A DNA stretch of 64,000 nucleotides from Saccostrea echinata (taxonomy: Eukaryota). Both the position numbers and the translations under genes were made by a program. The DNA lies in assembly GCF_033153115.1 (NCBI RefSeq), contig NW_026889758.1:28210001-28274000 (forward strand), read 5' to 3'. The notes beneath the pieces were generated by a model, which was not told where the DNA came from, searched no databases, and saw only the letters and a list, made by a program, of their open reading frames with translations. Shown piece after piece: positions 16,960 to 29,381 of this stretch. How positions within the stretch are numbered: position 1 is the first letter of the stretch; every line of letters begins with the position of its first letter.

Positions 16960-17040
16960 GCTTCGCGGATTATAAAGCGTAAACTGACCCAAACCAGGTT
17001 ATACTCAAATAATTTGGCCAAGAATTAGAGTCATTCCCTA
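16960..17040. repeat. Half-hairpin remnant of the H1 hairpin-ended element family
   Basis: Near-exact reverse complement of 19211-19291, beginning at the GCTTCGC apex. Confidence 0.85.
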
Positions 17041-17379
17041 ATTATTGAAAAGCTGATTTTCAGAACCTGAGGATCGGACTACCTTAAGAGGATTATGTAA
17101 AGGATGACTGCACTGAACGAGACATAAAATTTGCGACAAAATAAATTTTCCTGTAAATTGTAAAAATGGTTAACATCTAAACAACAACTTTGTGTATAAT
17201 TATATTAATTAAAATACTGTACTCGCGAAGTACAAATCCGGTTTCATAGCGGGGGTTATAATCCAGAATTTCTTGAATCTCCATACGAAAATGAGGATGT
17301 CCATTTTTTAATGACTTAATTAATACTGTCAACTCATGTTTGTCTATTGTTCTCCATTTAATGGTAGTTGTATATCTGT

Positions 17380-17585: not shown

Positions 17586-17802
17586 AATAATTTTGTGTCA
17601 AAAGGAGATTTTCAAACAAACGTTTTGTATTGTTTGTTTGTTTTTTTAATATTCGTTCTCTCTTTTAGTACCAAGCATTGTAACCTATTGGATATATATT
17701 ATATATAATTCACAAAGTGATTTTTCACCTCATGTAATGCTCATGTAAGTTACTGCGAATTAAATTTGACCCCCGTTCACACGGGGAATTTAATGCGAAT
17801 TA

Positions 17803-18340
17803 TGCCCTGTTCACACGGAGAGTTTAATTCGAATTAAACGTAAGTTACTGCGAATTAAATTTGATCCGCGTTCACACGGAGAATTTAATGCGAATTAGTT
17901 TAATTCGAATTAGTTTACTGCGCATTAAATTACTTCGCATTAGCTCCGTGTGAACGCTAAGCGAAGCTAATTCGAATTAAATTTTGACGCATGCGTAAGG
18001 GCAGAATTAAGTCACAGGCCACATGCCGATGGTCAAATATAGGTACTTGTGCTATTTTTGAGTGGTAAACAAAGGAAAATTATGTTAATCACTAAAATGT
18101 GTACAGACACTATGACATTACGTCAAATGTATATCTATTCTGCACAATATGACGTGATTTGTAAATGACGTCATAATAGCCTCACTGAATAGACTTGTTG
18201 TAGAAATTACATTATAATTCGCATTAGTTTACTTCGCATTAGCTGTCGTGTGAACGCATTTTAATTCGCATTAGTTTAATTCGCATCATTTTACTTCGCA
18301 TTAATTTACTGCGAATTAAACTCTCCGTGTGAACAGGGCA
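17803..18340 (+). mobile_element. PIF/Harbinger-type MITE copy B (538 bp)
   Basis: TIR TGCCCTGTTCACACGGAGAGTTTAATTCG / ...AAACTCTCCGTGTGAACAGGGCA; TTA TSD on both sides. Confidence 0.92.
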
Positions 18341-18455
18341 TTAGTTTAATTCGAATTAGTTTACTGCGCATTAAATTACTTCGCATTAGCTCCGTGTGAA
18401 CGCTAAGCGAAGCTAATTCGAATTAAATTTTGACGCATACGTAAGGGCAGAATTA

Positions 18456-18993
18456 TGCCCTGTTCACACGGAGAGTTTAATTCGAATTAAACGTAAGTTA
18501 CTGCGAATTAAATTTGATCCGTGTTCACACGGAAAATTTAATGCGAATTAGTTTAATTCGAATTAGTTTACTGCGCATTAAATTACTTCGCATTAGCTCC
18601 GTGTGAACGCTAAGCGAAGCTAATTCGAATTAAATTCTGACGCATGCGTAAGGGCAGAATTAAGTCACAGGCCACATGCCGATGGTCAAATATAGGTACT
18701 TGTGCTATTTTTGAGTGGTAAACAAAGGAAAATTATGTTAATCACTAAAATGTGTACAGACACTATGACATAATGTCAAATGTATACCTGCTCTGCACAA
18801 TATGACGTGATTTGTAAATGACGTCATAATAGCCTCACTGAAAAGCCTTGTTGTAAAAATAAAATTATAATTCGCATTAGTTTACTTCGCATTAGCTGTC
18901 GTGTGAACGCAATTTAATTCGCATTAGTTTAATTCGCACCATTTTACTTCGCATTAATTTACTGCGAATTAAACTCTCCGTGTGAACAGGGCA
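18456..18993 (+). mobile_element. PIF/Harbinger-type MITE copy C (538 bp)
   Basis: Same TIRs; flanks are TTA and ATA (imperfect TSD). Confidence 0.9.
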
Positions 18994-19787
18994 ATAAGTC
19001 ATATGCCACATGTCGGTGGTCAAATATAGGTATTTGTGCTATTTTTGAGTGGAAAACAAAGGAAAACTATCTTGATCACTAAAAACTGTACAGACACTAT
19101 GAAATTATGTCAAATGTACATCTGCTCTGCACAATGTGACGTGATCTGCAAATGACGTCATAATAGCCTAATAGTAGAAATTTATGCCCTGTTCACACGG
19201 AGAGTTTAATTTAGGAATGACTCTAATTCTTGGCCAAATTATTCGAGGATAACCTGGTTTGGGTCAGTTTACGCTTTATAATCCGCGAAGCGGATTATAA
19301 AACAGCGTAAACTGACCCAAACCAGGTTATCCTCGAATAATTTGGCCAAGAATTAGAGTCATTCCTTATAATTTAATTCTAAAATCATTAAACAACTCTG
19401 GGTGTAAAATTTCGTTGCTTTTTATTAGTTCAAATTTGCCGCTCAATAATACAACCCTAGTAACGGAAGTGATGGGAAGCGAGGGGAGGTAAAAACTGAT
19501 ACATAGTCCTAGCCATGTTTTTTGTTTACATGTGGTAAGATCCGAGTTACTGTTTGAAGTTAAAGGTACATTTATTAAATCTGGAATTTTCCATGAATCC
19601 CGAGGACTGGAAATGAGAGGATTGCATGGATACAGACGATTCAGCTGGTTGTCAGGGGGGTGTGTCCCCATACCAAACCAGGTTATACAGAAATAATAGA
19701 CTGTTTCACGATAATTTCCGCACATGCGCATAAAGACTTCCGCAGGGCAAACTACTTTCAATTCTTCCTATGAGTGATCAAAACGGA

Positions 19788-20170
19788 ACACTTATTTACA
19801 CGTCCCAAATAAACAAATTTTATATGAAACTGTGTTTGTTTTTTGTGTTTTTGTAATTATTACATTAAGTTCTTTTGTTTTTTATTTAAATATACGAGAT
19901 GTTTTGTAAAATAAATTTTAAATTCAAGCATGAATCTTGGTGTACTACGGACACTTCCGCGTTTAAAATCAAGATAGGACACTTATTTACACGTCCCCAA
20001 TAAACAGAATTTATATGAAATTGAGTTTGTTTTTTGTGGTTTTGTAATTATTACATTAGGATCTTTTGTTTTTATTTAAATATACGAGATGTTTTGCAAA
20101 AATAAATTATTAAAGCGTCGATTTTAGTGCACTGCGGGCACTTCCGTGTTTACTAATCAAAAGATGGCGA
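19788..20170 (+). repeat. ~191-bp tandem duplication of the YqaJ gene promoter region
   Basis: ACACTTATTTACACGTCCC...CACTTCCG...AAGAT repeats at ~19788 and ~19979. The second copy ends in AAGATGGCG, which contains the start codon. Confidence 0.85.
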
Positions 20171-22936
20171 CCCGGGAGATTTCAAAAGATCCAAAGAGGA
20201 AAAATAAGGAAGTTCTTCAAGAAGTGCCTATCAAATATTTTGCATCTTCCCTGGAAGGTGTTGTACCAGACATTCCAGGTCACGAAAACCTCCCCCCTTT
20301 GCAGTTAGCCTCGTATATTACGGTAACGCCCACTTTCATGCCTCAGATTTCCTTCCAACAAATTTATCAACATATGATTCTCAGGAAAACAACAGATGGG
20401 AAGGAAGTTAATAACCACAGGGGTCTTGACAGAGCCATCAAACATTTCGAAGCTGGTGATATTTCACAAGTTATGATAGCACAGGTAAATTTAAGAAAAT
20501 AAAATTACAAGTGTACACATAATAATTAGAAGAACAATATGATTCTTTTGTCCTTGCACAAACACAATATTCTATCAACATTTTGTATTTCCTAAAATGA
20601 GTTATGAATTTAAATTAATTACAAACTGATAAATTCTTAGCTGTAATAATGTATCCCTCTCCTATAATTTTTATTTGGTGTTTTTAGGAGAGGGCTAGCC
20701 CCCCCCCCCCCCCAAGAAAAAAAACCCACAACAATGGTGAGGGCTAATTATTGCAGCTAATAAATTGTATGTGTATATGAAAATTGAATATGTACATGCC
20801 CACATGTTTATACATGCCCACATGTTTATTTAGTGATATGAAAATGCAAGGTTGCTTACATTTAGATTGACGACTCTGTGGATTATATAAGGGGATCCTG
20901 CTTGGCCTCCATGAAAAAAATCAAGTACCATGTATATATTTGTGTAGAAAACAAGCAAAAAGTCTGCTTTGCCTACTGTGAATGTCCAATTGGGTAAGGT
21001 AGCATTTTTAATAAAATAAAAATTAATTTGATAAAATCCCTTTCTTTATCTTGACTCCTTTCATATATACAGCAAGCATTAACTTCTAGTCTACATTGTA
21101 TCTATAATTAAATTTCATTAAAGTTTGGCCCAGTCATGCAGCCACATAGGCGGTCTACTTTTTTACATTCACCACCTACAACTTAGTGAAAAGCTAATGT
21201 CGGATAGTGCCACCTCTAAATCATGTCAATGGAATGTCCCCCGCCCTATGAAAATGGAACCAAAGCCCTTGAAAGACTGGAACTTAAGTCGACCCAAGTT
21301 GAGCTCGGAAGGCCAGGTTGAGTTCAGGGAAAAGAAACAGATTGACTTTGATCCACGTCACCCAGATCAGAGGGAATTTCAACTTGCTCACTCAATTGAA
21401 CAACTAAAGATTCTTAAGAAAATATTCCCCAAAACTGGTGAGCTTGTAAATTGGATATAGATATGGTATTACAATGTAGTGAAAAATTATGAGATTTGAT
21501 GTTTTAGAATATCTTATATTTTTACACCAATAACACTTCGTAAATACAGCTGATCTTCGGTATCTCGAACACCGATATCTCGAATACCATGGATATGTCG
21601 ATGTCAATTGGAATTGCCAGCCACTTATTCTTTAGGTATTTAACCCTTGATATCTTGAATACTCGGATATCTCAGTTTTTTTTCTTGGTCCCATTGAGTT
21701 CGAGATAACGAGGTTTGTCTGTATTTCAAATAATATAAAATGATCAATAAATCATGCCTTGCAACAGTGAATGTATTTATTAGGTTCTTACAATAAACAA
21801 AAGATCAAATTTAATATATGATTTAAAATGTCAGGTATGTGTCATTTATGGATGATCCCAGATGAAACACCAGAAGTAGTAAAAGAAGTGGAGGTACAGA
21901 CATCTGAGGATCCTATGGAGATGGCAATGAAGGCACTAATTCTGTCCAAGGAGAACTGTAAGAAAAAATAAACACAGAATTCAGATTATATAATTACTTG
22001 TAACTGATCAGAATTCAAATTTATTTTCCATGTTTTTATAATAGTGCCGATGGCAATCTCAATTGATGAAAACCTCAGCTTATTCATTGAGGAGAGAACC
22101 CAGGGCCAAAGATGTTGTCCAATATGGAGAGAGCTGCACAAAGGGAGAATAACCAGTTCTCTCTTTGGTGCAGTTCTCGGCTCTGGTGCTAACCCTAACT
22201 CCCTGGTAGACCAGATAATTAAAGGATCTGGTCTAGACAGGTACAGTACATTTCATGCAAAAAATTTAACATTTTGGAATTAAAACACTTATTGATTACA
22301 TTCATGAATGTTTATTTTAGATACCAGTCACTGCCCAAAGCAATACAGTGGGGCATAGACCATGAAAAGGAAGCCCTCCAGGACTATCTCTGCCTCCAGA
22401 ATTGCGTTACTAATCTAACAGTGGAACCATCAGGACTTACCATATATCCATCTCATGCATTTTTAGGTGCCTCTAGTGATGGATGGATATATGATAAGTC
22501 CATGCCAGTGGGTAACCAGAAAGGGGTGCTGGAAATTAAATGTCCTTATTCTATTTCCAATGAAGTCATCACAGACAGAGAGGTACAACAGTAGCATTTT
22601 TTTTTTTCCCATTTATTCAGCTTAATTGTTTTTTGAATTGCTGATCTACAGAAATTTAATTTATAGGTGCATGAACTTGCTGGACAAGGTGGTTTCTGTC
22701 TGGAGATGACTGATGAGGGCCCTCGCTTGAAAAGATCCCACAAATACTATGCCCAGATTCAGGGAGAGATGGCCATCATGGGTTGCTCATGGGGAGATTT
22801 TGTGGTTTGGACAGCTGCCTCTCAGAGCAATTGCTTTATCGAGAGAGTTTATTTCGATGTTACCTTTGTAACTTCAATGATGCCCAAACTTGTAGAATTT
22901 TTTGTTAGTTATATTTCACCTTCTTATACTAAATAG
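20164..22936 (+). CDS. ISL2EU accessory protein: SWIM zinc finger plus YqaJ/lambda-exonuclease-like PD-(D/E)xK nuclease, ~537 aa; exons 20164-20484, 20866-20993, 21124-21437, 21835-21957, 22045-22240, 22321-22582, 22667-22936
   Basis: All introns are GT-AG and phase-compatible, giving 1614 nt open. SWIM CECPIGLAQSCSH. YqaJ motifs TQGQ..W...HKGRITSS, WGIDHE, LGASSDG, LEIKCP, YYAQIQGEM. Confidence 0.9.
21547..21721. mobile_element. Tc1/mariner-pogo-type MITE in YqaJ intron 3
   Basis: TA|CAGCTGATCTTCGGTATCTCGAAC ... GTTCGAGATAACGAGGTTTGTCTG|TA. Confidence 0.8.
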
Positions 22937-23174
22937 TAAAACTCCATGATACCTCATTGAAACCTGTGTTGATTGACCAATTTGTCTTTGCATAATATTT
23001 CTGATAATTTTAGCCATCAGATCAAATGAGGACCTTATCATTTTAACTTTATAGAAGAAAACATTCAAGAAGTAGTGTTCAACATTTCCACTTCTGTCTT
23101 CCCACCTATTCAATTCATACCATTATGCAGGCGTTAAAGGAATACTTGAAGTTTTAAATTGTTCTTTAACTTAC

Positions 23175-26122
23175 CTAATTCTCAATCAAAGGGACATCAA
23201 AGTTTGTAATCCAACAGCAAACAGCAAACATCTGTGACGCTAATGGCACTAAAGAAAGAGAAAGAATACCATCAAAAATATGAAAATTCTTTACACGACC
23301 TATAGCTCTTTCTACATGAATTCTTAATTTAGCAATATCTTGAGTTTCGAAAACATCTTTAGTAGAAAATTGGTTAGAAGAAGAACGAAAAGGTGGGATA
23401 TTCAAAGTGCAGCCCTTTTTTTCTAGCAAATCTCGTATAGTAAAACCCTTGTCTGCCATCACCCCATCCCCTTCCTCCAGAAGTTCAAGAAAGAGGGATC
23501 GCTCTATCATCTGGCGATCTGACACCTTCCCACCAAAGCTCTCTGAAACAAAAGATATAACACCAGAGGGAGTGATTCCAATAAGAAACTTTAAAGTGGT
23601 ATGATGCTTGTAGTGTGAAAATGACTGATTCTGATTAATCAAACTGCTAGATCTCTGAATAAATATTTCTGTACAATCAAGTATAACTCTAAGATTTGAA
23701 AAAGAATGAAAGCATGATGGCATATTTCTCTGTATAATATCCCTAGATGGAAAGGGATTAAGCTCTTTCAGTTCCTTGTAGAGAAGGCACACCCAAGTTG
23801 CAAAGTATTGCGAAAAGGTCCCTGTTGACACTCCAAATCTCTCTGCCATGTCCTGGACATACAAGCCAACCTTTAAATATTGAAGACACATATAAAAAAT
23901 TTAAATATTAAATGAACCCTTAAATCAAAAAGCATGGAACAATTAATATAATATAATATAATATTGTGTTTCTCCTATGATTACCTTAAGTCTCATCAAG
24001 GTTGCTAAGAATTGATCAATAGGCTCCAAAGCCATGCACCTTCTAGTTCTGCTCCTTTCTTCTGGGGTTGAGGAACTGCCTCTCCAGTATACCATTCTCT
24101 CACATTTGGGAGCCAGATAACTGAATATAAAAGAATTAAGTTTTTAATACATCAAGGGATGGGTAAATGAATGGATAGATAAATTAGATGCTAAAGTGGT
24201 TTCAAGAACATTAATAAATCATATTTTACTATATCATTCCCAACTATCTCATTGGCTTAAACTTGATCACATGATCCTGCAAATTAAACAATCATGGTGA
24301 TAACAATATACAATTATGGACTTTAGTGTAGGTCGATATGTGGTTATAAGGACTCCTCTCAAGTGATATTGACCAAAGACCCAGAAAGTGATAGCAACCG
24401 AGCTTGCGAGGTCGCTATCATTTTCTGTGTCTGAGGTCAACATCACTTGACATGGCTCCTTATAACCAAACTTACCATTCATTTATATTAGTTATATTAT
24501 ATAATCACTCAAAATGAATATCCTGACAAAGTCCTAACTGAACAGACTTGGCTGACATTAAGTCACAATGGTAAACACATGCTTCTTATATTATGACGTC
24601 ACATTCTACACAACTTTGGTGGAGCCAAAGTGTGAGTCATGCGATGTCATATTCCACCAATGTGCTTTTGCGTCAATATCACAAAAGGACGAATATCATT
24701 TGACATCCTTTCAGCCAATGAAAATTACAGAAATAATCTTATATAATATTTGTCAATATTGACTGGATGTTCCTATATACATACTTGAAGAGCCATAAAA
24801 AAACTGCAAAGGTTGGCAGTCCCGTATAAAACTTTGTCATGGCATCATCATCCTTGATCTTTGCCACAGACCATTTACTATCTTGCAGTCTTCTCAACTC
24901 AGACTGGAGCTTCCTGTTCTCAAGTAACAAGGGATCTGGATCACATTGTACACCTACAATCATTTAATGAATGTTTACCCTTGAATAGACAATACATGTA
25001 TGTCTTTTTTACATTGATGAAATTAAGGAATGACTTGTCACGTAGGCATATTTCATGAAGCGAGCTAGCACTTCATGAAAAATATGCCTACGTGCTAGTC
25101 TGTGTGATCTACACACCAATAATTCACACAAAACTTAAAAACATTCCTTATATTTACATTTTACATGTTCAAAATCACCAACAATATACTCATTGTTTGA
25201 ATTTCTCGCTGTCCTATATCGTTACATTCTTTATTAATGTCTCTGTATCCTCATTGTGACGTCACTTTAGCACGAGTTTCTCAGTGCATATTTCTACGCG
25301 TGAGTATACACTAAAATGGTATTCATATCAATTTCACAGTTGGCTTAGTAGAAAAACACAGCAAATGTAAATATTAAAAACTGATTTTTGATATACCCTC
25401 TGTAAATTTCGTTTTGTCATCCTCTCAACTCTTTTTACATCCACAGCCTTCTCCTTGTAAGAAAAAAGTGTTGGGACATAATTAGTATCTTCTGGATCAT
25501 CACTATGCCACCCTAAAACAAAATGCTCAGAGCATATGCATGTGTGGTCACTGGGTGTGAAATCCTTTCTGTTGATGGCCTTAATCCACAGACGCCGTTT
25601 TCTGGTATCCTTTGGGAATCTTTATTGATAAAAAGCTCGAAATAAATACATGTATTTAGTACTGTAAATCTCTAAAACATACACACACAGAAACACCAGT
25701 ATAATTATATTTTGTGTAGAATTACGTTAATTTCCAAAATGTGCAATAGAAAGACTGTTTGATTCTAGATCTACATATTTATCCTGTGATGAACTGTATA
25801 TTTATCCTGTGATGAACTGTAATTATGTAAATAATTAAGTAAATATATAGAAATATATAGTCAACCATTTATATAGGTCGCAACTACTTTGCATCTCAAC
25901 AAAGGAAATAGTATAATATTATTACATAAATGTGAAAATTAGTGGACATACCCTTATGTTATATATACATGTACACTGTACAAAGGTATGTTTGAGATCA
26001 TTTTATCATGAATTATTTGGAAGAAAAAAAATGATAACATACCTAAAAAAGTGAAGTCCCTTCTCCTTTCCCTTTGTGTCATCACGATTTGTACATCCAA
26101 ACACGCAACACGTTCTTACCAT
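23175..26122 (-). CDS. ISL2EU transposase: THAP, HTH and DDE (Harbinger-like DDE_Tnp_4); exons 26122-26043, 25619-25397, [linker exon unresolved], 24953-24785, 24120-23985, 23870-23175
   Basis: THAP MVRTCCVFGC...FPKD...W...CICSEHF...VPTLF; FYTGLP; HTH LMRLKVGLYVQDMAERFGVS; catalytic LDCTE, MADKGF, RIHVERAIGRVK. Phase mismatch between 25397 and 24953. Confidence 0.88.
24301..24748. mobile_element. Hairpin-ended element H2 in a transposase intron
   Basis: Imperfect palindrome 24342-24467. Internal junction TATATTAGTTA|TATTATATAA (24484-24504) is complementary to the ends TAACAATATA and TTATATAATA. CCAAT at 24715. Confidence 0.65.
25024..25373. mobile_element. Hairpin-ended element H3 in a transposase intron
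   Basis: Palindrome 25039-25094. Internal CATTCCTTA|TATTTACATTT (25142-25161) is the exact reverse complement of right end AAATGTAAATA joined to left end TAAGGAATG. Confidence 0.7.
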
Positions 26123-26888
26123 GCCTAATGTTTATCGAGTAAACCGAAAGCGCAAGTTTCATTAAAGTGAAAGTTTGCCCTGCATGTGCGAAGAGCAGGC
26201 TCGCAGTTACCGTGAAACGGTCTATTTGTGTTCCTTTTTGGATATTAACCAATCAGAGGCTAGAATACAAACAAAATTGAATTATTTCGAATTAAACGTA
26301 AGTTACTGCGAATTAAATTCGATCCGCGTTCACACGGAGAATTTAATGCGAATTAGTTTAATTCGAATTAGTTTACTGCGCATTAAATTACTTCGCATGA
26401 GCTCCGTGTGAACGCTAAGCGAAGCTAATTCGAATTAAATTTTGACGCATGCGTAAGGGCAGAATTACGTCACAAGCCACATGTCGGTGGTCAGATATAG
26501 GTACTTGTGCTATTTTTGAGTGGAAAAAAGGGAAAATATGATAATCACTAAAATGTGTACAGACACTATGACAATGTCAAATCAGTGGTCAAATGTATCT
26601 GCTCAGCACAATATGACCTGATTCGCAAAATGACGTCATAATAGCCTTACTGAATAGCCTTATTGTAGAAATAAAAATTTAATTCGCATTAGTTTACTTC
26701 GCATTAGTTGTCGTGTGAACGCAATTTAATTCGCATTAGTTTAATTCGCATTAGTTTACTTCGCATTAATTTAATTCGAATTAAACTCTCCGTGTGAACA
26801 GGGCATTAACATTTTAATTCGCATTAGTTTACTTCGCATTAGGTGTGAACGCAATTTAATTCGCATTAGTTTAATTCGCATCATTTTA

Positions 26889-27408
26889 TGCCCTGTTCAC
26901 ACGGAGAGTTTAATTCGAATTAAACGTAAGTTACTGCGAATTAAATTTGATCCGTGTTCACACGGAGAATTTAATGCGAATTAGTTTAATTCGAATTAGT
27001 TTACTGCGCATTAAATTACTTCGCATTAGCTCCGTGTGAACGCTAAGCGAAGCTAATTCGAATTAAATTTTGACGCATGCGTAAGAGCAAAATTAAATCA
27101 CCTGCCACATGACGGTGGTCAGTTATAGGTACCTATGCCATTTTTAGTGCAAAACAAAGGAAAATTACGTTAATCACTGAAATGTGTATAGACACTATGA
27201 CATTATGTCAAATGGATTTGCTCTGCATAAGGTGACGTGATTTGAAAATGACGTCAGAATAGCCTTACTGAAAAGCCTTACTGTAGAAATAAAATTTTAA
27301 TTCGCATTAGTTTACTTCGCATTATCTGTCGTGTGAACGCAATTTAATTCGCATTATTTTATTTCCTATTAATTTACTGCGAATTAAACTCTCCGTGTGA
27401 ACAGGGCA
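26889..27408 (+). mobile_element. PIF/Harbinger-type MITE copy E
   Basis: Same TIRs; TTA TSD at 26886-26888 and 27409-27411. Confidence 0.9.
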
Positions 27409-29381
27409 TTACTTCGCATTAATTTACTGCGAATTAAAATCTCCGTGTGAACAGGGCATAACATTGTGAATACTTAATTTGTCACGCGACTTGTAGGGTA
27501 GCATGAGTTTTGAATGTTATGTTCTTTCCTGACTGATCTACTAGGGAATTGTGTTCGAACATGTAAAATTGTCAGGCATTGATTTACGATCTTCTTCTTC
27601 TACATCTTTTTGCTCTTATTGAAACCTTTGTTGAAACCTGGTGCCATATATGGGAAAAAAAAAAAATCATTCTTACAGTATTAGCTCCACCTCTCCTGCA
27701 TATTTACCAGTATAGATCAGACAATGTAATTTCCAAAGCAGCGAGGGCGAAAAAAGAACAACTTATTTTATTGCATCACAGTCATCAATCATTTCAAATT
27801 GACGTGAAAAGGAGTTGAATTAGGTAAGGCATGGAAGTTACAGAAGCCACCGAAAAAAAAATCAGTCCTAAGTGCAGTCGTCCTTTTTTCTGCAATGATA
27901 GCAATCGTTATTCCCTGTATTAACAAATACGAATTTTTTTATATTTATATCTGCATAAGCAATTCAGGGAAAGAACGTAAAATATTGTATAATTGGGTCG
28001 TAGATACATTGATGGAAGAGCCTGCTTCTCCATAAAATCTTTCAAACAGAGGTTCTAATATAGATTATTTATTGTTAATGCGAAAAGGGCAATCGTTTTT
28101 TTTTTTATAAGAAATAGAGAAAATATTTAGTTGATGTAGAATCTATGCATAATAAAAATATCTATAAATAAAATATGTCAAAAGAGTCTGTTAGACATTT
28201 TTTTAAAAGATAAAATAATTTTTATGAATTCCTCCTTAAATGCATATTTAAGCAATATGCTGTTAAGTTAAATAAATATTTACTTGAAGTTTCCGCTTTT
28301 TACTATACACGGAAAATTCATGTGATGCATATTGTAAATTACTTGGCGTTTGAGACAGAATAATAGTATCATTTGCATGAAATATCAACAGTTTCATAAA
28401 AATGAAGCCCATCATTTAATATACTTACATGTATCAACGGTAAAATAAGGGAATAATTAACACACATATGTTATCAAAACTGTAACCTGAGATAAAATAA
28501 ATTCTTGTACATTTCTACTCTAGGGCAAATATGGACAAATCGGGAGAAGACGTGAAGGGTTAGCTGGGTCACTTAATAGACAATGACCCCTGGTTGGACA
28601 CATGTATATTGGTCCAAACTACGTTGAATCATGAATATGCAAAAATGATATCTCTATTACATAGGAAATGTGAATAAGTTATATCATCTAATATAGTAGA
28701 GGGTGAACATGGCTGAATTTCAAACTCTTTATGCACAAATACATGTAACATCACCTGCGGGGACTTTGGTCATGGACAGTATCACACAGTGGTGTGTGTA
28801 TATATACCAGTAATTAGACAGAAATAAATTACACGGCCAAGTGATCTGGCGATAAGCAACTTGCTTTACTCCTTTCTGTTGAAAACAAAATTTTACCTTT
28901 ACATTTAAAAAGAAAAAGATCAGGATGAGACCAATACAACAACACTAATGTACTTATCCCATGAGCACTGAACAGTTGAAGTTAATGATATCAACCGATT
29001 GCCAAAATATTAACCTTTTCATTTACGACAATGAAAACACAACAATGCATGCCTAGCACTCATAGTCCTTCGTAACGATGATCGAAAAAATAATATAATT
29101 TCATTTGCATTTCATTGAAAATTTCAAATATGAAAAATTTACAGTCTTAACTATAGAAACGTACTGATTTAAAATGTTTTTTCTGTTAAATATAGATCCG
29201 ATAGATGTCTTTGTCGCCGTTTATTTCCCGGTATACTTACTCACTTCGGGTCACCATTCTAACCAGTACCCTGACCAATACACGTTCTTGACAAAACATC
29301 ACGTAACATAGTAACAAACCATCGATCAAATCACCGCAATTATACAGAACTTTCTTATCGAACACATTTATTACGACATGG

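What the first reader, a model, noticed from the sequence alone, without database searches (positions are those of the whole stretch)
19211..26284. Three unrelated small elements share a self-splinting design: terminal hairpin plus an internal complement of the joined ends
Seen: H1 (19211-19697 plus 26226-26284), H2 (24301-24748) and H3 (25024-25373) have different bodies but the same layout: [left end - long palindrome - complement of left end | complement of right end - body - right end]. In H3 the internal 20-mer CATTCCTTA|TATTTACATTT exactly complements right end plus left end joined (AAATGTAAATA|TAAGGAATG). H1 (CATTCCTTA|TAATTTAATT) and H2 (TATATTAGTTA|TATTATATAA) do so with few mismatches. 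All three junctions centre on TA|TA. Palindrome apices are short GC-rich motifs (GCGAAGC, CGAGCTTGCG, CGAGCTAGC). H1 and H2 have CCAAT ~30 bp from the far end. None has a clean TSD. Known: DIRS retroelements use an internal complementary region (ICR) to align their ends into a circle that a tyrosine recombinase integrates, and d(GCGAAGC) is an unusually stable mini-hairpin. Inference: these are tiny non-coding elements that fold as a single-stranded dumbbell, abut their own ends for ligation, and are mobilised in trans by a Crypton/DIRS-like recombinase or a HUH nuclease. Structure appears conserved where sequence is not.
Basis: partly seen in the sequence, partly recalled or inferred. Interest (0 to 1): 0.85.

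Follow-up and report, generated by a model that had tools for sequence, protein, structure and literature searches.

The report
Hairpin-ended rolling-circle transposon relics
The three small elements are real, high-copy, non-coding mobile elements whose layout matches the known Helitron2/Helentron rolling-circle transposons, here with an unusually long terminal hairpin, so the "self-splinting" design is a sharp view of a known architecture, not a new kind of element.

Summary
H1, H2 and H3 are separate repeat families (about 1800, 260 and 1900 first-look candidates in this 923-Mb genome). H1 is indeed split by a 6.5-kb DDE transposon. Each family has a 150-190-nt palindrome that starts at one terminus. 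An 11-12-nt repeat follows it directly and is the exact reverse complement of the other terminus. I found a fourth family (H4) with the same plan.

There is no target duplication. Insertion is at TAW|W. Predicted single-strand folds of H1 and H3 bring the two ends together on the internal segment, leaving a 2-3-nt T bulge at the nick. So the "exact" 20-mer holds only after trimming one T from each end. Exact head-to-tail junctions are more than 200-fold over-represented.

This layout matches published Helitron2/Helentron (HLE2, HINE) termini: short asymmetric inverted repeats beside a terminal stem-loop, no TSD, T-rich targets. The genome holds at least 285 RepHel candidates, including an intact Helentron present in seven identical copies.

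I could not tie any RepHel element to these termini, so membership rests on architecture (confidence about 0.7). Crypton or DIRS mobilisation is not supported. The long palindrome flush with the terminus is the only unusual feature.

The parts
19207..19697 (+). H1, left part: terminal palindrome, internal repeat and most of the body
   Evidence: Aligns end to end with 20 genomic copies. The left end is fixed by the flanks and by the empty site in sister array units.
19210..19367 (+). H1 terminal palindrome (apex GCGAAGC), preceded by three unpaired T
   Evidence: Arms 96% complementary. Forms the hairpin in both the MFE and the centroid fold of a full copy.
19368..19378 (+). H1 internal asymmetric inverted repeat (ATAATTTAATT)
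   Evidence: 11/11 complementary to the consensus right terminus. Paired with the last 11 nt in the fold.
19698..26225 (.). 6.5-kb DNA transposon inserted into H1. It is not part of the H design. It has AGACYGTTTCACG inverted ends and either a 2-bp AT duplication or none.
   Evidence: Other H1 copies are continuous across this point. Pfam hits are DDE_Tnp_4 and HTH_Tnp_4 on the minus strand, and YqaJ and viral alkaline exonuclease on the plus strand. Two further identical copies lie on C1 and C52.
26226..26285 (+). H1, right part, ending in the terminal repeat at 26275-26285 (AATTGAATTAT; the G is private to this copy)
   Evidence: The host array resumes at 26286.
24307..24749 (+). H2, complete copy. 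Palindrome 24307 to about 24493, internal repeat 24494-24504, terminal repeat 24739-24749.
   Evidence: Alignment of 30 sequences, 27 of them independent copies at about 82% identity, with sharp ends.
25023..25374 (+). H3, a copy with a 42-nt deletion in the left arm. Palindrome 25025-25149, internal repeat 25150-25161, terminal repeat 25363-25374.
   Evidence: Alignment of 19 copies. Fold of a full-length copy.
17745..19206 (.). Host context: a satellite-like array of about 630-653-bp units that H1 interrupts. It resumes at 26286 and runs to about 27460.

Best explanation
H1, H2, H3 and a fourth family, H4, found elsewhere in the genome, are non-autonomous Helitron-like elements of the HLE2 group (Helitron2/Helentron; their non-coding derivatives are called HINEs).

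Layout on the window's + strand: a 150-190-nt palindrome starts 2-3 nt from the left terminus. An 11-12-nt repeat follows it directly. Then comes a family-specific body of 200-380 nt. The element ends with the reverse complement of that repeat.

Shown here:
- sharp family ends;
- no target duplication;
- insertion at TAW|W, where the left flank mimics the element's own ...TAT right end;
- a predicted single-strand fold in which the internal repeat pairs with the far terminus directly beside the hairpin foot, so the two ends meet at a nick carrying a 2-3-nt T bulge;
- more than 200-fold excess of exact head-to-tail junctions;
- intact Helentron genes in the same genome.

Inferred:
- A RepHel protein (HUH nuclease plus helicase) supplied in trans nicks one strand after TAT at the element boundaries and at the target.
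- The displaced single strand folds as above.
- The folded junction either marks the termination point or helps the 3' OH attack the tyrosine-linked 5' end, giving a circle or concatemer that is then inserted.

Which strand moves is not settled. So it is also unsettled whether the hairpin is the 3' end (canonical HLE2) or the 5' end ('HLE2-reverse').
For: Family ends and layout.

Repeat lengths of 11, 11, 12 and 12 nt fall inside the published 8-16-nt range, and the repeat lies directly beside the stem-loop (PMC3627910; PMC4067079; PMC11417382).

No TSD, and the target statistics over 61 insertions:
- T at -3 in 51 of 61;
- A at -2 in 57 of 61;
- W at -1 in 56 of 61;
- W at +1 in 57 of 61.

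Three empty sites:
- L008 and L014, which are nested copies;
- the window's own H1 site, compared with sister array units.

Fusarium Helitron2 elements insert between TNAT and A/T and show joined ends (PMC5148889).

Folds: H1 and H3 form the hairpin plus the end-closing helix in both the MFE and the centroid structures.

Covariation: H3 and H4 share the junction 14-mer, but the 12th repeat pair changes from T:A to C:G on both sides.

Chance level is about 2e-4 per element.

Head-to-tail junctions: 11 for H1 and 10 for H3, with controls at 0, against about 0.04 expected.

RepHel: 285 candidates, of which 150 were scored and all exceeded the Pfam cut-off, with many open frames of 2500-2900 aa. 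One ORF carries OTU, DUF6570, Helitron_like_N, PIF1 and Exo_endo_phos domains and lies in seven 100%-identical copies.

Classical pearl/Cg_HINE-type elements are also present (PMC7492417).
Against: - No autonomous RepHel element carrying these termini was found. None of the listed H copies lies within 100 kb of a listed RepHel hit. The one Helentron I examined shows no such ends within 22 kb.
- The palindrome is roughly 5-30 times longer than published HLE2 stem-loops. It also runs to the terminus with no tail.
- There is no hairpin or inverted repeat at the repeat-bearing terminus, unlike Helitron2, DINE-1 and Cg_HINE.
- The target is TAW|W rather than a strict T|T.
- In the diverged H2 copy I folded, the AT-only repeat helix is not in the MFE structure.
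- Repbase and Dfam could not be consulted.
Confidence: 0.7

Rival explanations
1. The elements belong to a separate, undescribed group of single-strand DNA transposons. A HUH nuclease that is not a Helitron RepHel would mobilise them, for example a stand-alone or virus-derived Rep. The resemblance to HLE2 termini would then be convergent.
For: No RepHel partner was found. The palindrome length and its position flush with the terminus lie outside published HLE2 ranges. Replitrons show that other Rep-based eukaryotic transposons exist (PMC10288648).
Against: Every structural hallmark that could be tested fits HLE2. Replitrons are reported from plants, algae and protists, not from animals (abstract). 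RepHel genes are abundant and intact in this genome.
Confidence: 0.12
2. A Crypton-like tyrosine recombinase integrates a double-stranded circle by crossover between the element's joined ends (...TAT|TT...) and a TAW target. The hairpin and the repeat would serve another role.
For: The left flank (TAW) and the element's right end (TAT) form a quasi-direct repeat, as site-specific recombination would leave. Over-represented head-to-tail junctions are also compatible with this.
Against: Conserved single-strand structure with a compensatory change has no role in double-strand site-specific recombination. The flank differs from TAT in 24 of 61 insertions, including six young H1 copies. No recombinase link was found. 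From my own knowledge, Cryptons lack terminal hairpins and inverted repeats.
Confidence: 0.05
3. Each element is a chance composite: a foldback or MITE-type palindrome inserted next to, or inside, an unrelated repeat, both moved by DDE transposases.
For: The left part, from TTAAGGAATG to CATTCCTTA, looks like a TIR-bounded unit. A lone palindrome arm exists at window 16960-17047.
Against: In 4 families and more than 70 aligned copies the palindrome and the body always occur together, with a constant junction. There is no TSD. A TA-duplication model fails at the window's own empty site by one base. The repeat complementarity is about 2e-4 by chance per family.
Confidence: 0.02

Closest known systems
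Helitron2 elements (Bao & Jurka 2013, PMC3627910)
   Same: Short asymmetric terminal inverted repeats: one copy 0-2 nt from one terminus, the other immediately beside the hairpin at the other end. No TSD. T at the 5' end. The authors proposed that pairing of the two repeats defines the replication end point.
   Different: There, the repeat next to the hairpin lies only 20-30 nt from the terminus, so the hairpin is short; here it is 150-190 nt long. Helitron2 also has a second hairpin at the repeat-bearing terminus, which is not seen here. Autonomous partners are known for Helitron2 but not for these families.
Helentrons and their non-autonomous HINEs / DINE-1, including oyster Cg_HINE / pearl elements (PMC4067079, PMC7492417)
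   Same: 11-15-nt subterminal inverted repeats, a palindrome after the 3' repeat, a preference for T-rich or TT targets, no TSD, very high copy number, nesting in other repeats, and tandem copies. Intact Helentron genes and classical HINEs occur in this genome.
   Different: HINE palindromes are 5-10 bp and lie 8-35 nt from the end. HINEs usually carry a microsatellite, central tandem repeats and a 5' inverted repeat. H1-H4 have none of these.
'HLE2-reverse' arrangement (FoHeli3-5 of Fusarium, proto-Helentron; PMC5148889, PMC11417382)
   Same: [quoted passage not shown] This is how this variant is described.
   Different: The sequences are unrelated and come from fungal and oomycete hosts. Their stem-loops are short and set at a distance from the repeat.
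IS200/IS605 (IS608) single-strand transposition (works like; stated from my own knowledge)
   Same: A HUH enzyme, subterminal hairpins, and no TSD. Insertion is 3' of a short target that mimics the cleavage site at the other end. Cleavage sites are recognised through base pairing with a segment at the hairpin foot.
   Different: IS608 is bacterial, uses a Y1 transposase, and has hairpins at both ends and 4-nt guides. There is no evidence of homology.
DIRS internal complementary region
   Same: An internal segment complementary to both element ends.
   Different: DIRS elements are retroelements of several kilobases with terminal repeats at both ends and RT and YR genes. The ICR acts on cDNA. 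None of these features is present here.

Membership tests
HLE2 (Helitron2/Helentron) non-autonomous elements | Short (8-16 nt) inverted repeats placed asymmetrically: one at or near a terminus, the other internal | tested here: met
   11, 11, 12 and 12 nt, exact in the family consensus for H1-H4. The terminal copy reaches the last base.
HLE2 (Helitron2/Helentron) non-autonomous elements | A stem-loop directly beside the internal repeat, at the end of the element | tested here: met
   The palindrome abuts the repeat with a 0-1-nt gap. It is much longer (150-190 nt) than published examples and has no tail.
HLE2 (Helitron2/Helentron) non-autonomous elements | No target-site duplication | tested here: met
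   61 insertions and three empty sites.
HLE2 (Helitron2/Helentron) non-autonomous elements | Insertion between T and T, or in T-rich or TNAT|W targets | tested here: inconclusive
   The target is TAW|W. T at -1 occurs in 37 of 61 and T at +1 in 32 of 61. This is close to the TNAT|A/T target of Fusarium Helitron2 but is not a strict TT.
HLE2 (Helitron2/Helentron) non-autonomous elements | Termini shared with an autonomous element encoding RepHel, with or without an endonuclease | tested here: inconclusive
   RepHel genes are abundant and intact, but none was linked to H-type ends.
HLE2 (Helitron2/Helentron) non-autonomous elements | A second hairpin or inverted repeat at the repeat-bearing terminus (Helitron2, DINE-1, Cg_HINE) | tested here: not met
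   No such helix appears in the folds. The feature is not universal: the FoHeli3-5 group lacks one of the two hairpins.
HLE2 (Helitron2/Helentron) non-autonomous elements | Signs of a circular or concatemeric intermediate, meaning precise head-to-tail copies | tested here: met
   11 (H1) and 10 (H3) exact junctions against about 0.04 expected. Some are duplicated within a higher-order repeat.
DIRS-like retroelements | Terminal repeats at both ends plus RT/RNase H/YR coding capacity; an ICR complementary to the ends | tested here: not met
   The inverted repeat is a single contiguous palindrome at one end. The elements are 390-560 nt with no ORF. Only the ICR-like complementarity is present.
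Crypton (tyrosine-recombinase transposons) | Encodes, or depends on, a YR; no terminal structures; short direct repeats at the boundaries from crossover | tested here: inconclusive
   The TAW...TAT quasi-repeat is compatible. The terminal hairpin and repeat are not expected for Cryptons. No YR link was sought beyond the local context.
MITE / foldback elements of DDE transposons | [quoted passage not shown] | tested here: not met
   No TSD. A TA-duplication model fails at the window's empty site. The element is asymmetric.

The most novel reading that the evidence does not exclude
The long palindrome flush with the terminus, together with the adjacent repeat, is a functional end-joining device. 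In the displaced single strand it holds the 3' and 5' ends on an internal splint and presents the TAT|TT junction as a small bulge. This would make H1-H4 either a distinct lineage of single-strand DNA transposons or a distinct HLE2 subgroup whose termination or circularisation step can be read directly from sequence.
Probability: 0.15. Interest if true: 0.7.

Novelty: new member of a known kind. Interest (0 to 1): 0.35.

Why it matters
The end chemistry of Helitron2/Helentron transposition has not been worked out as it has for the bat Helraiser element. These families carry the terminal structure in exaggerated form:
- a perfect 11-12-bp helix beside a roughly 80-bp hairpin stem;
- a compensatory change between families;
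- an over-representation of exact end-to-end junctions.

H1 is 98-99% identical among about 1800 candidates, which suggests recent activity. That makes it a practical substrate for testing whether pairing of the two repeats sets the termination or circle-closing point.

For genome annotation, the finding shows that a large share of the 'foldback/MITE-like' palindromes in this genome are rolling-circle elements, and that they nest in one another and in satellites.

Tried and rejected
**(1) Search for the autonomous partner.**
- I cross-checked all listed H1-H4 places against 150 RepHel places. None lies within 100 kb.
- I fetched one active-looking Helentron on C5 (L081-L083, 22 kb). It has no H-like ends or long palindromes. 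All seven copies are identical across the full 22 kb, so its ends could not be found.
- tblastn with its RepHel found nothing in the window or in any H locus.

**(2)** A 17-nt CCAAT-box match between H2 and L081 looked like chance.

**(3) TSD models.** Duplications of TA, TAT or TT fit the nested empty sites. They fail for flanks that are not TAT and at the window's own empty site.

**(4)** An apparent end-to-end junction in L014 turned out to be the internal junction of an inverted, interrupted copy.

**(5) Parvovirus-like rolling-hairpin idea.** It was rejected because there is a hairpin at one end only and the terminal bases are unpaired.

**(6) Earlier scan notes** gave no partner.

**(7) Reads.** No read-based test for circles or insertion polymorphism was therefore made.

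**(8)** The N run near window 61800-61960 was left as it is.
Full report
**Context.** The window is G000:C9:28210001-28274000 of a 923-Mb, AT-rich (about 33% GC), intron-bearing eukaryotic genome. It carries pearl/Cg_HINE-type repeats typical of bivalves. The region 17745-19206 and 26286-27460 is a satellite-like array of about 630-653-bp units. Everything between those two stretches is inserted DNA.

**Checking the observation.** I searched the genome with each element plus flanks and aligned the copies.

*H3* has about 1900 first-look candidates at about 92% identity.
- Nineteen copies align with sharp ends: TTAAGGAATG... on the left and ...GCAAATGTAAATAT on the right.
- Full-length copies have a palindrome of about 165 nt.
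- The window copy (25023-25374) lacks 42 nt of the left arm.

*H2* has about 260 candidates at about 82% identity. It runs from TATACAATTATGG... to ...CTTATATAATAT, at 24307-24749.

*H1* has about 1800 candidates at 98-99% identity.
- All hits stop at window 19697.
- Twenty copies fetched with flanks continue without a break into the sequence found at window 26226-26285.
- The intervening 19698-26225 is a separate transposon. It has 13-nt inverted ends and either a 2-bp AT duplication or none.
- It carries a DDE_Tnp_4/HTH_Tnp_4 transposase gene with a THAP-like start on the minus strand. It carries a YqaJ/alkaline-exonuclease gene on the plus strand.
- H2 and H3 sit in introns of the transposase gene. 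They were copied with the transposon to two other loci.

*The internal repeat.* In each family consensus, the word that begins at the foot of the palindrome is the exact reverse complement of the far terminus:
- H1: ATAATTTAATT
- H2: ATATTATATAA
- H3: ATATTTACATTT

Random pseudo-elements in this window show an 11-nt match of that kind in 63 of 300,000 trials.

*A fourth family.* A scan of all loci I held for long palindromes turned up H4.
- It is at L011:1124-1449 plus 1844-2085, with at least 748 candidates.
- Its palindrome and body are unrelated to the others, but the plan is the same.
- Its repeat, ATATTTACATTC, pairs 12/12 with the terminus ...GAATGTAAATAT.
- H3 and H4 share the 14-nt junction word. 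The twelfth pair of the repeat differs on both sides: T:A in H3 and C:G in H4. This is a compensatory change.
- Otherwise the four families share nothing beyond 14-46 nt around the junction.

**Ends, targets and junctions.**
- Across 61 insertions there is no target duplication.
- The left flank is strongly biased: T at -3 in 51 of 61, A at -2 in 57 of 61, W at -1 in 56 of 61. The first base after the element is W in 57 of 61. P values range from 1e-6 to 1e-22.
- The target is therefore TAW|W, and its left half mimics each element's own ...TAT right end.
- Three empty sites confirm the ends. Two are nested copies in L008 and L014. The third is the window's own H1 site, which in sister array units reads GAGTTTAA|TTCGAATT.
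- That third site has TAA on the left. It therefore shows that the right-hand TAT belongs to the element and is not a duplication.
- With these ends, the internal segment is 2 nt shorter than the complement of the joined ends.

*Folds as single-stranded DNA.*
- A full H1 copy and a full H3 copy both give the same structure, in the MFE and in the centroid (z = -15 and -17).
- It consists of 2-3 unpaired T, then the long hairpin, then at once an 11-12-bp helix between the internal repeat and the last bases of the element.
- The ends thus meet at a nick with a small T bulge.
- A diverged H2 copy does not form the AT-only helix in its MFE.

*Head-to-tail junctions.*
- Exact junctions exist in the assembly: 11 for H1 and 10 for H3. 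The reversed-pattern controls give none.
- Target choice alone predicts about 0.04.
- At one locus the junctions belong to a 1112-bp higher-order repeat of a 'mini-H1' (nt 1-165 plus 485-551) followed by H1. Not all junctions are therefore independent events.

**What it is.** The plan matches published Helitron-like elements of the HLE2 group.
- Bao and Jurka describe Helitron2 termini as 8-15-nt asymmetric inverted repeats. One copy lies 0-2 nt from the 5' end and the other immediately upstream of the 3' hairpin. They suggest that pairing of the two defines the replication end point (PMC3627910).
- Helentrons and their non-coding HINEs, including DINE-1 and the oyster Cg_HINEs, have 11-15-nt subterminal repeats, a 3' palindrome, TT-rich targets and no TSD (PMC4067079; PMC7492417).
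- HELIANO summarises canonical HLE2 as short inverted repeats at both ends with a stem-loop after the right repeat. [quoted passage not shown]
- Fusarium Helitron2 elements insert between TNAT and A/T and yield joined ends by PCR (PMC5148889).
- The host genome encodes many RepHel proteins: 285 candidates, with the 150 scored all above the Pfam cut-off and many open frames of 2500-2900 aa.
- One ORF I examined has OTU, DUF6570, Helitron_like_N, PIF1 and Exo_endo_phos domains, which is the Helentron make-up. It lies in seven 100%-identical copies.

**Mechanism.**
- Shown: the structure, the ends, the targets and the junction excess.
- Inferred from the published Helitron and HUH literature and from my own knowledge of IS608: a RepHel supplied in trans nicks one strand after TAT at the boundaries and at the target. 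The displaced strand folds so that the internal repeat and the hairpin foot bridge the two ends. That folded junction marks termination or aids closure to a circle or concatemer, which is then inserted 3' of a TAW site.
- Which strand moves is open. The strand with T at both boundaries puts the hairpin at the 5' end ('HLE2-reverse'). The other strand gives the canonical 3' hairpin.

**What is missing and what differs.**
- I could not link any RepHel element to these termini. Membership therefore rests on architecture, not on a demonstrated partner.
- The palindrome is roughly 5-30 times longer than published HLE2 stem-loops and runs to the terminus.
- There is no second hairpin at the repeat-bearing end.
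- The target is TAW|W rather than a strict TT.
- A tyrosine-recombinase crossover at TAW would leave the same flanks and cannot be excluded from sequence alone. It gives no role, however, to a conserved and covarying single-strand structure.
- DIRS features are absent.
- A composite of independent insertions is contradicted by more than 70 aligned copies with constant junctions.
It is therefore untested whether these families are already catalogued and whether free circles exist.

**Verdict.** The design is the known Helitron2/Helentron terminal architecture in an exaggerated form, so these are new members of a known kind. Interest is moderate. H1 in particular looks recently active and would be a convenient natural substrate for testing how HLE2 ends are recognised and joined.

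Noticed in passing
window 19698-26225 (also G000:C1 near 30.02-30.03 Mb and C52 near 14.33 Mb): A 6.5-kb DNA transposon with 13-nt inverted ends (AGACYGTTTCACG) and a 2-bp AT duplication or none. On the minus strand it has a multi-exon transposase gene (THAP-like start, HTH_Tnp_4, DDE_Tnp_4). On the plus strand it has a multi-exon YqaJ/alkaline-exonuclease gene. From memory this combination fits the ISL2EU/PIF-Harbinger group. The three copies are identical where compared, and all carry H2 and H3 in the same introns.
   Followed up: partly
L011:1124-1449 plus 1844-2085; L084-L093: A fourth family (H4, at least 748 candidates, about 86% identity) with the same plan. It has an unrelated 155-nt palindrome (apex CCGCGCGTTAGCGCGG). 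Its 12-nt repeat differs from H3's at one position, with the change present on both sides. The L011 copy carries a nested H3.
   Followed up: yes
L081-L083 (G000:C5:6819000-6841000): A segment of at least 22 kb is present in seven copies at 100% identity. It contains an uninterrupted Helentron ORF (OTU, DUF6570, Helitron_like_N, PIF1, Exo_endo_phos) that one search lists as 2626 aa; 2051 aa of it lie inside L081. It is either a very large active Helentron or a recent segmental duplication. Its ends were not reached.
   Followed up: partly
L081:1-1275: A classical pearl/Cg_HINE-like element. It has a short terminal hairpin after a run of T, a GTCY-type microsatellite and tandem repeats of about 166 bp. 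The 3.9-kb query L081:1-3900, which includes it, gave about 15,000 first-look candidates genome-wide, and many hits end sharply at position 1275.
   Followed up: no
window 25270-25285 (H3), 24595-24605 (H2), 26245-26255 (H1); L011 H4 body: The element bodies carry promoter-like motifs. TGACGTCA (CRE-like) occurs in H2 and H3, with a TGACG half-site in H4. CCAAT boxes with good NF-Y context lie about 35-40 nt from the repeat-bearing terminus of H1 and H2. The host satellite units also carry TGACGTCA.
   Followed up: no
window 16960-17047: A lone H1-type fragment: a single palindrome arm running from the apex to the terminus. It could be a truncated copy or a hairpin-mediated deletion.
   Followed up: partly
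L094 (G000:C54:43569800-43573400): A 1112-bp higher-order tandem repeat made of a 'mini-H1' (palindrome plus internal repeat joined to the last 67 nt) followed head to tail by a longer H1 variant. The mini element shows what a minimal H1 retains.
   Followed up: partly
window 17745-19206 and 26286-27460: A satellite-like array of about 630-653-bp units, built from sub-repeats with GTTCACACGGAG-type inverted ends and AATTCGCATTAG 15-mers.
   Followed up: no
window about 61800-61960: A run of N flanked by A/T-rich inverted sequence. It is masked or a gap, and I left it untouched.
   Followed up: no
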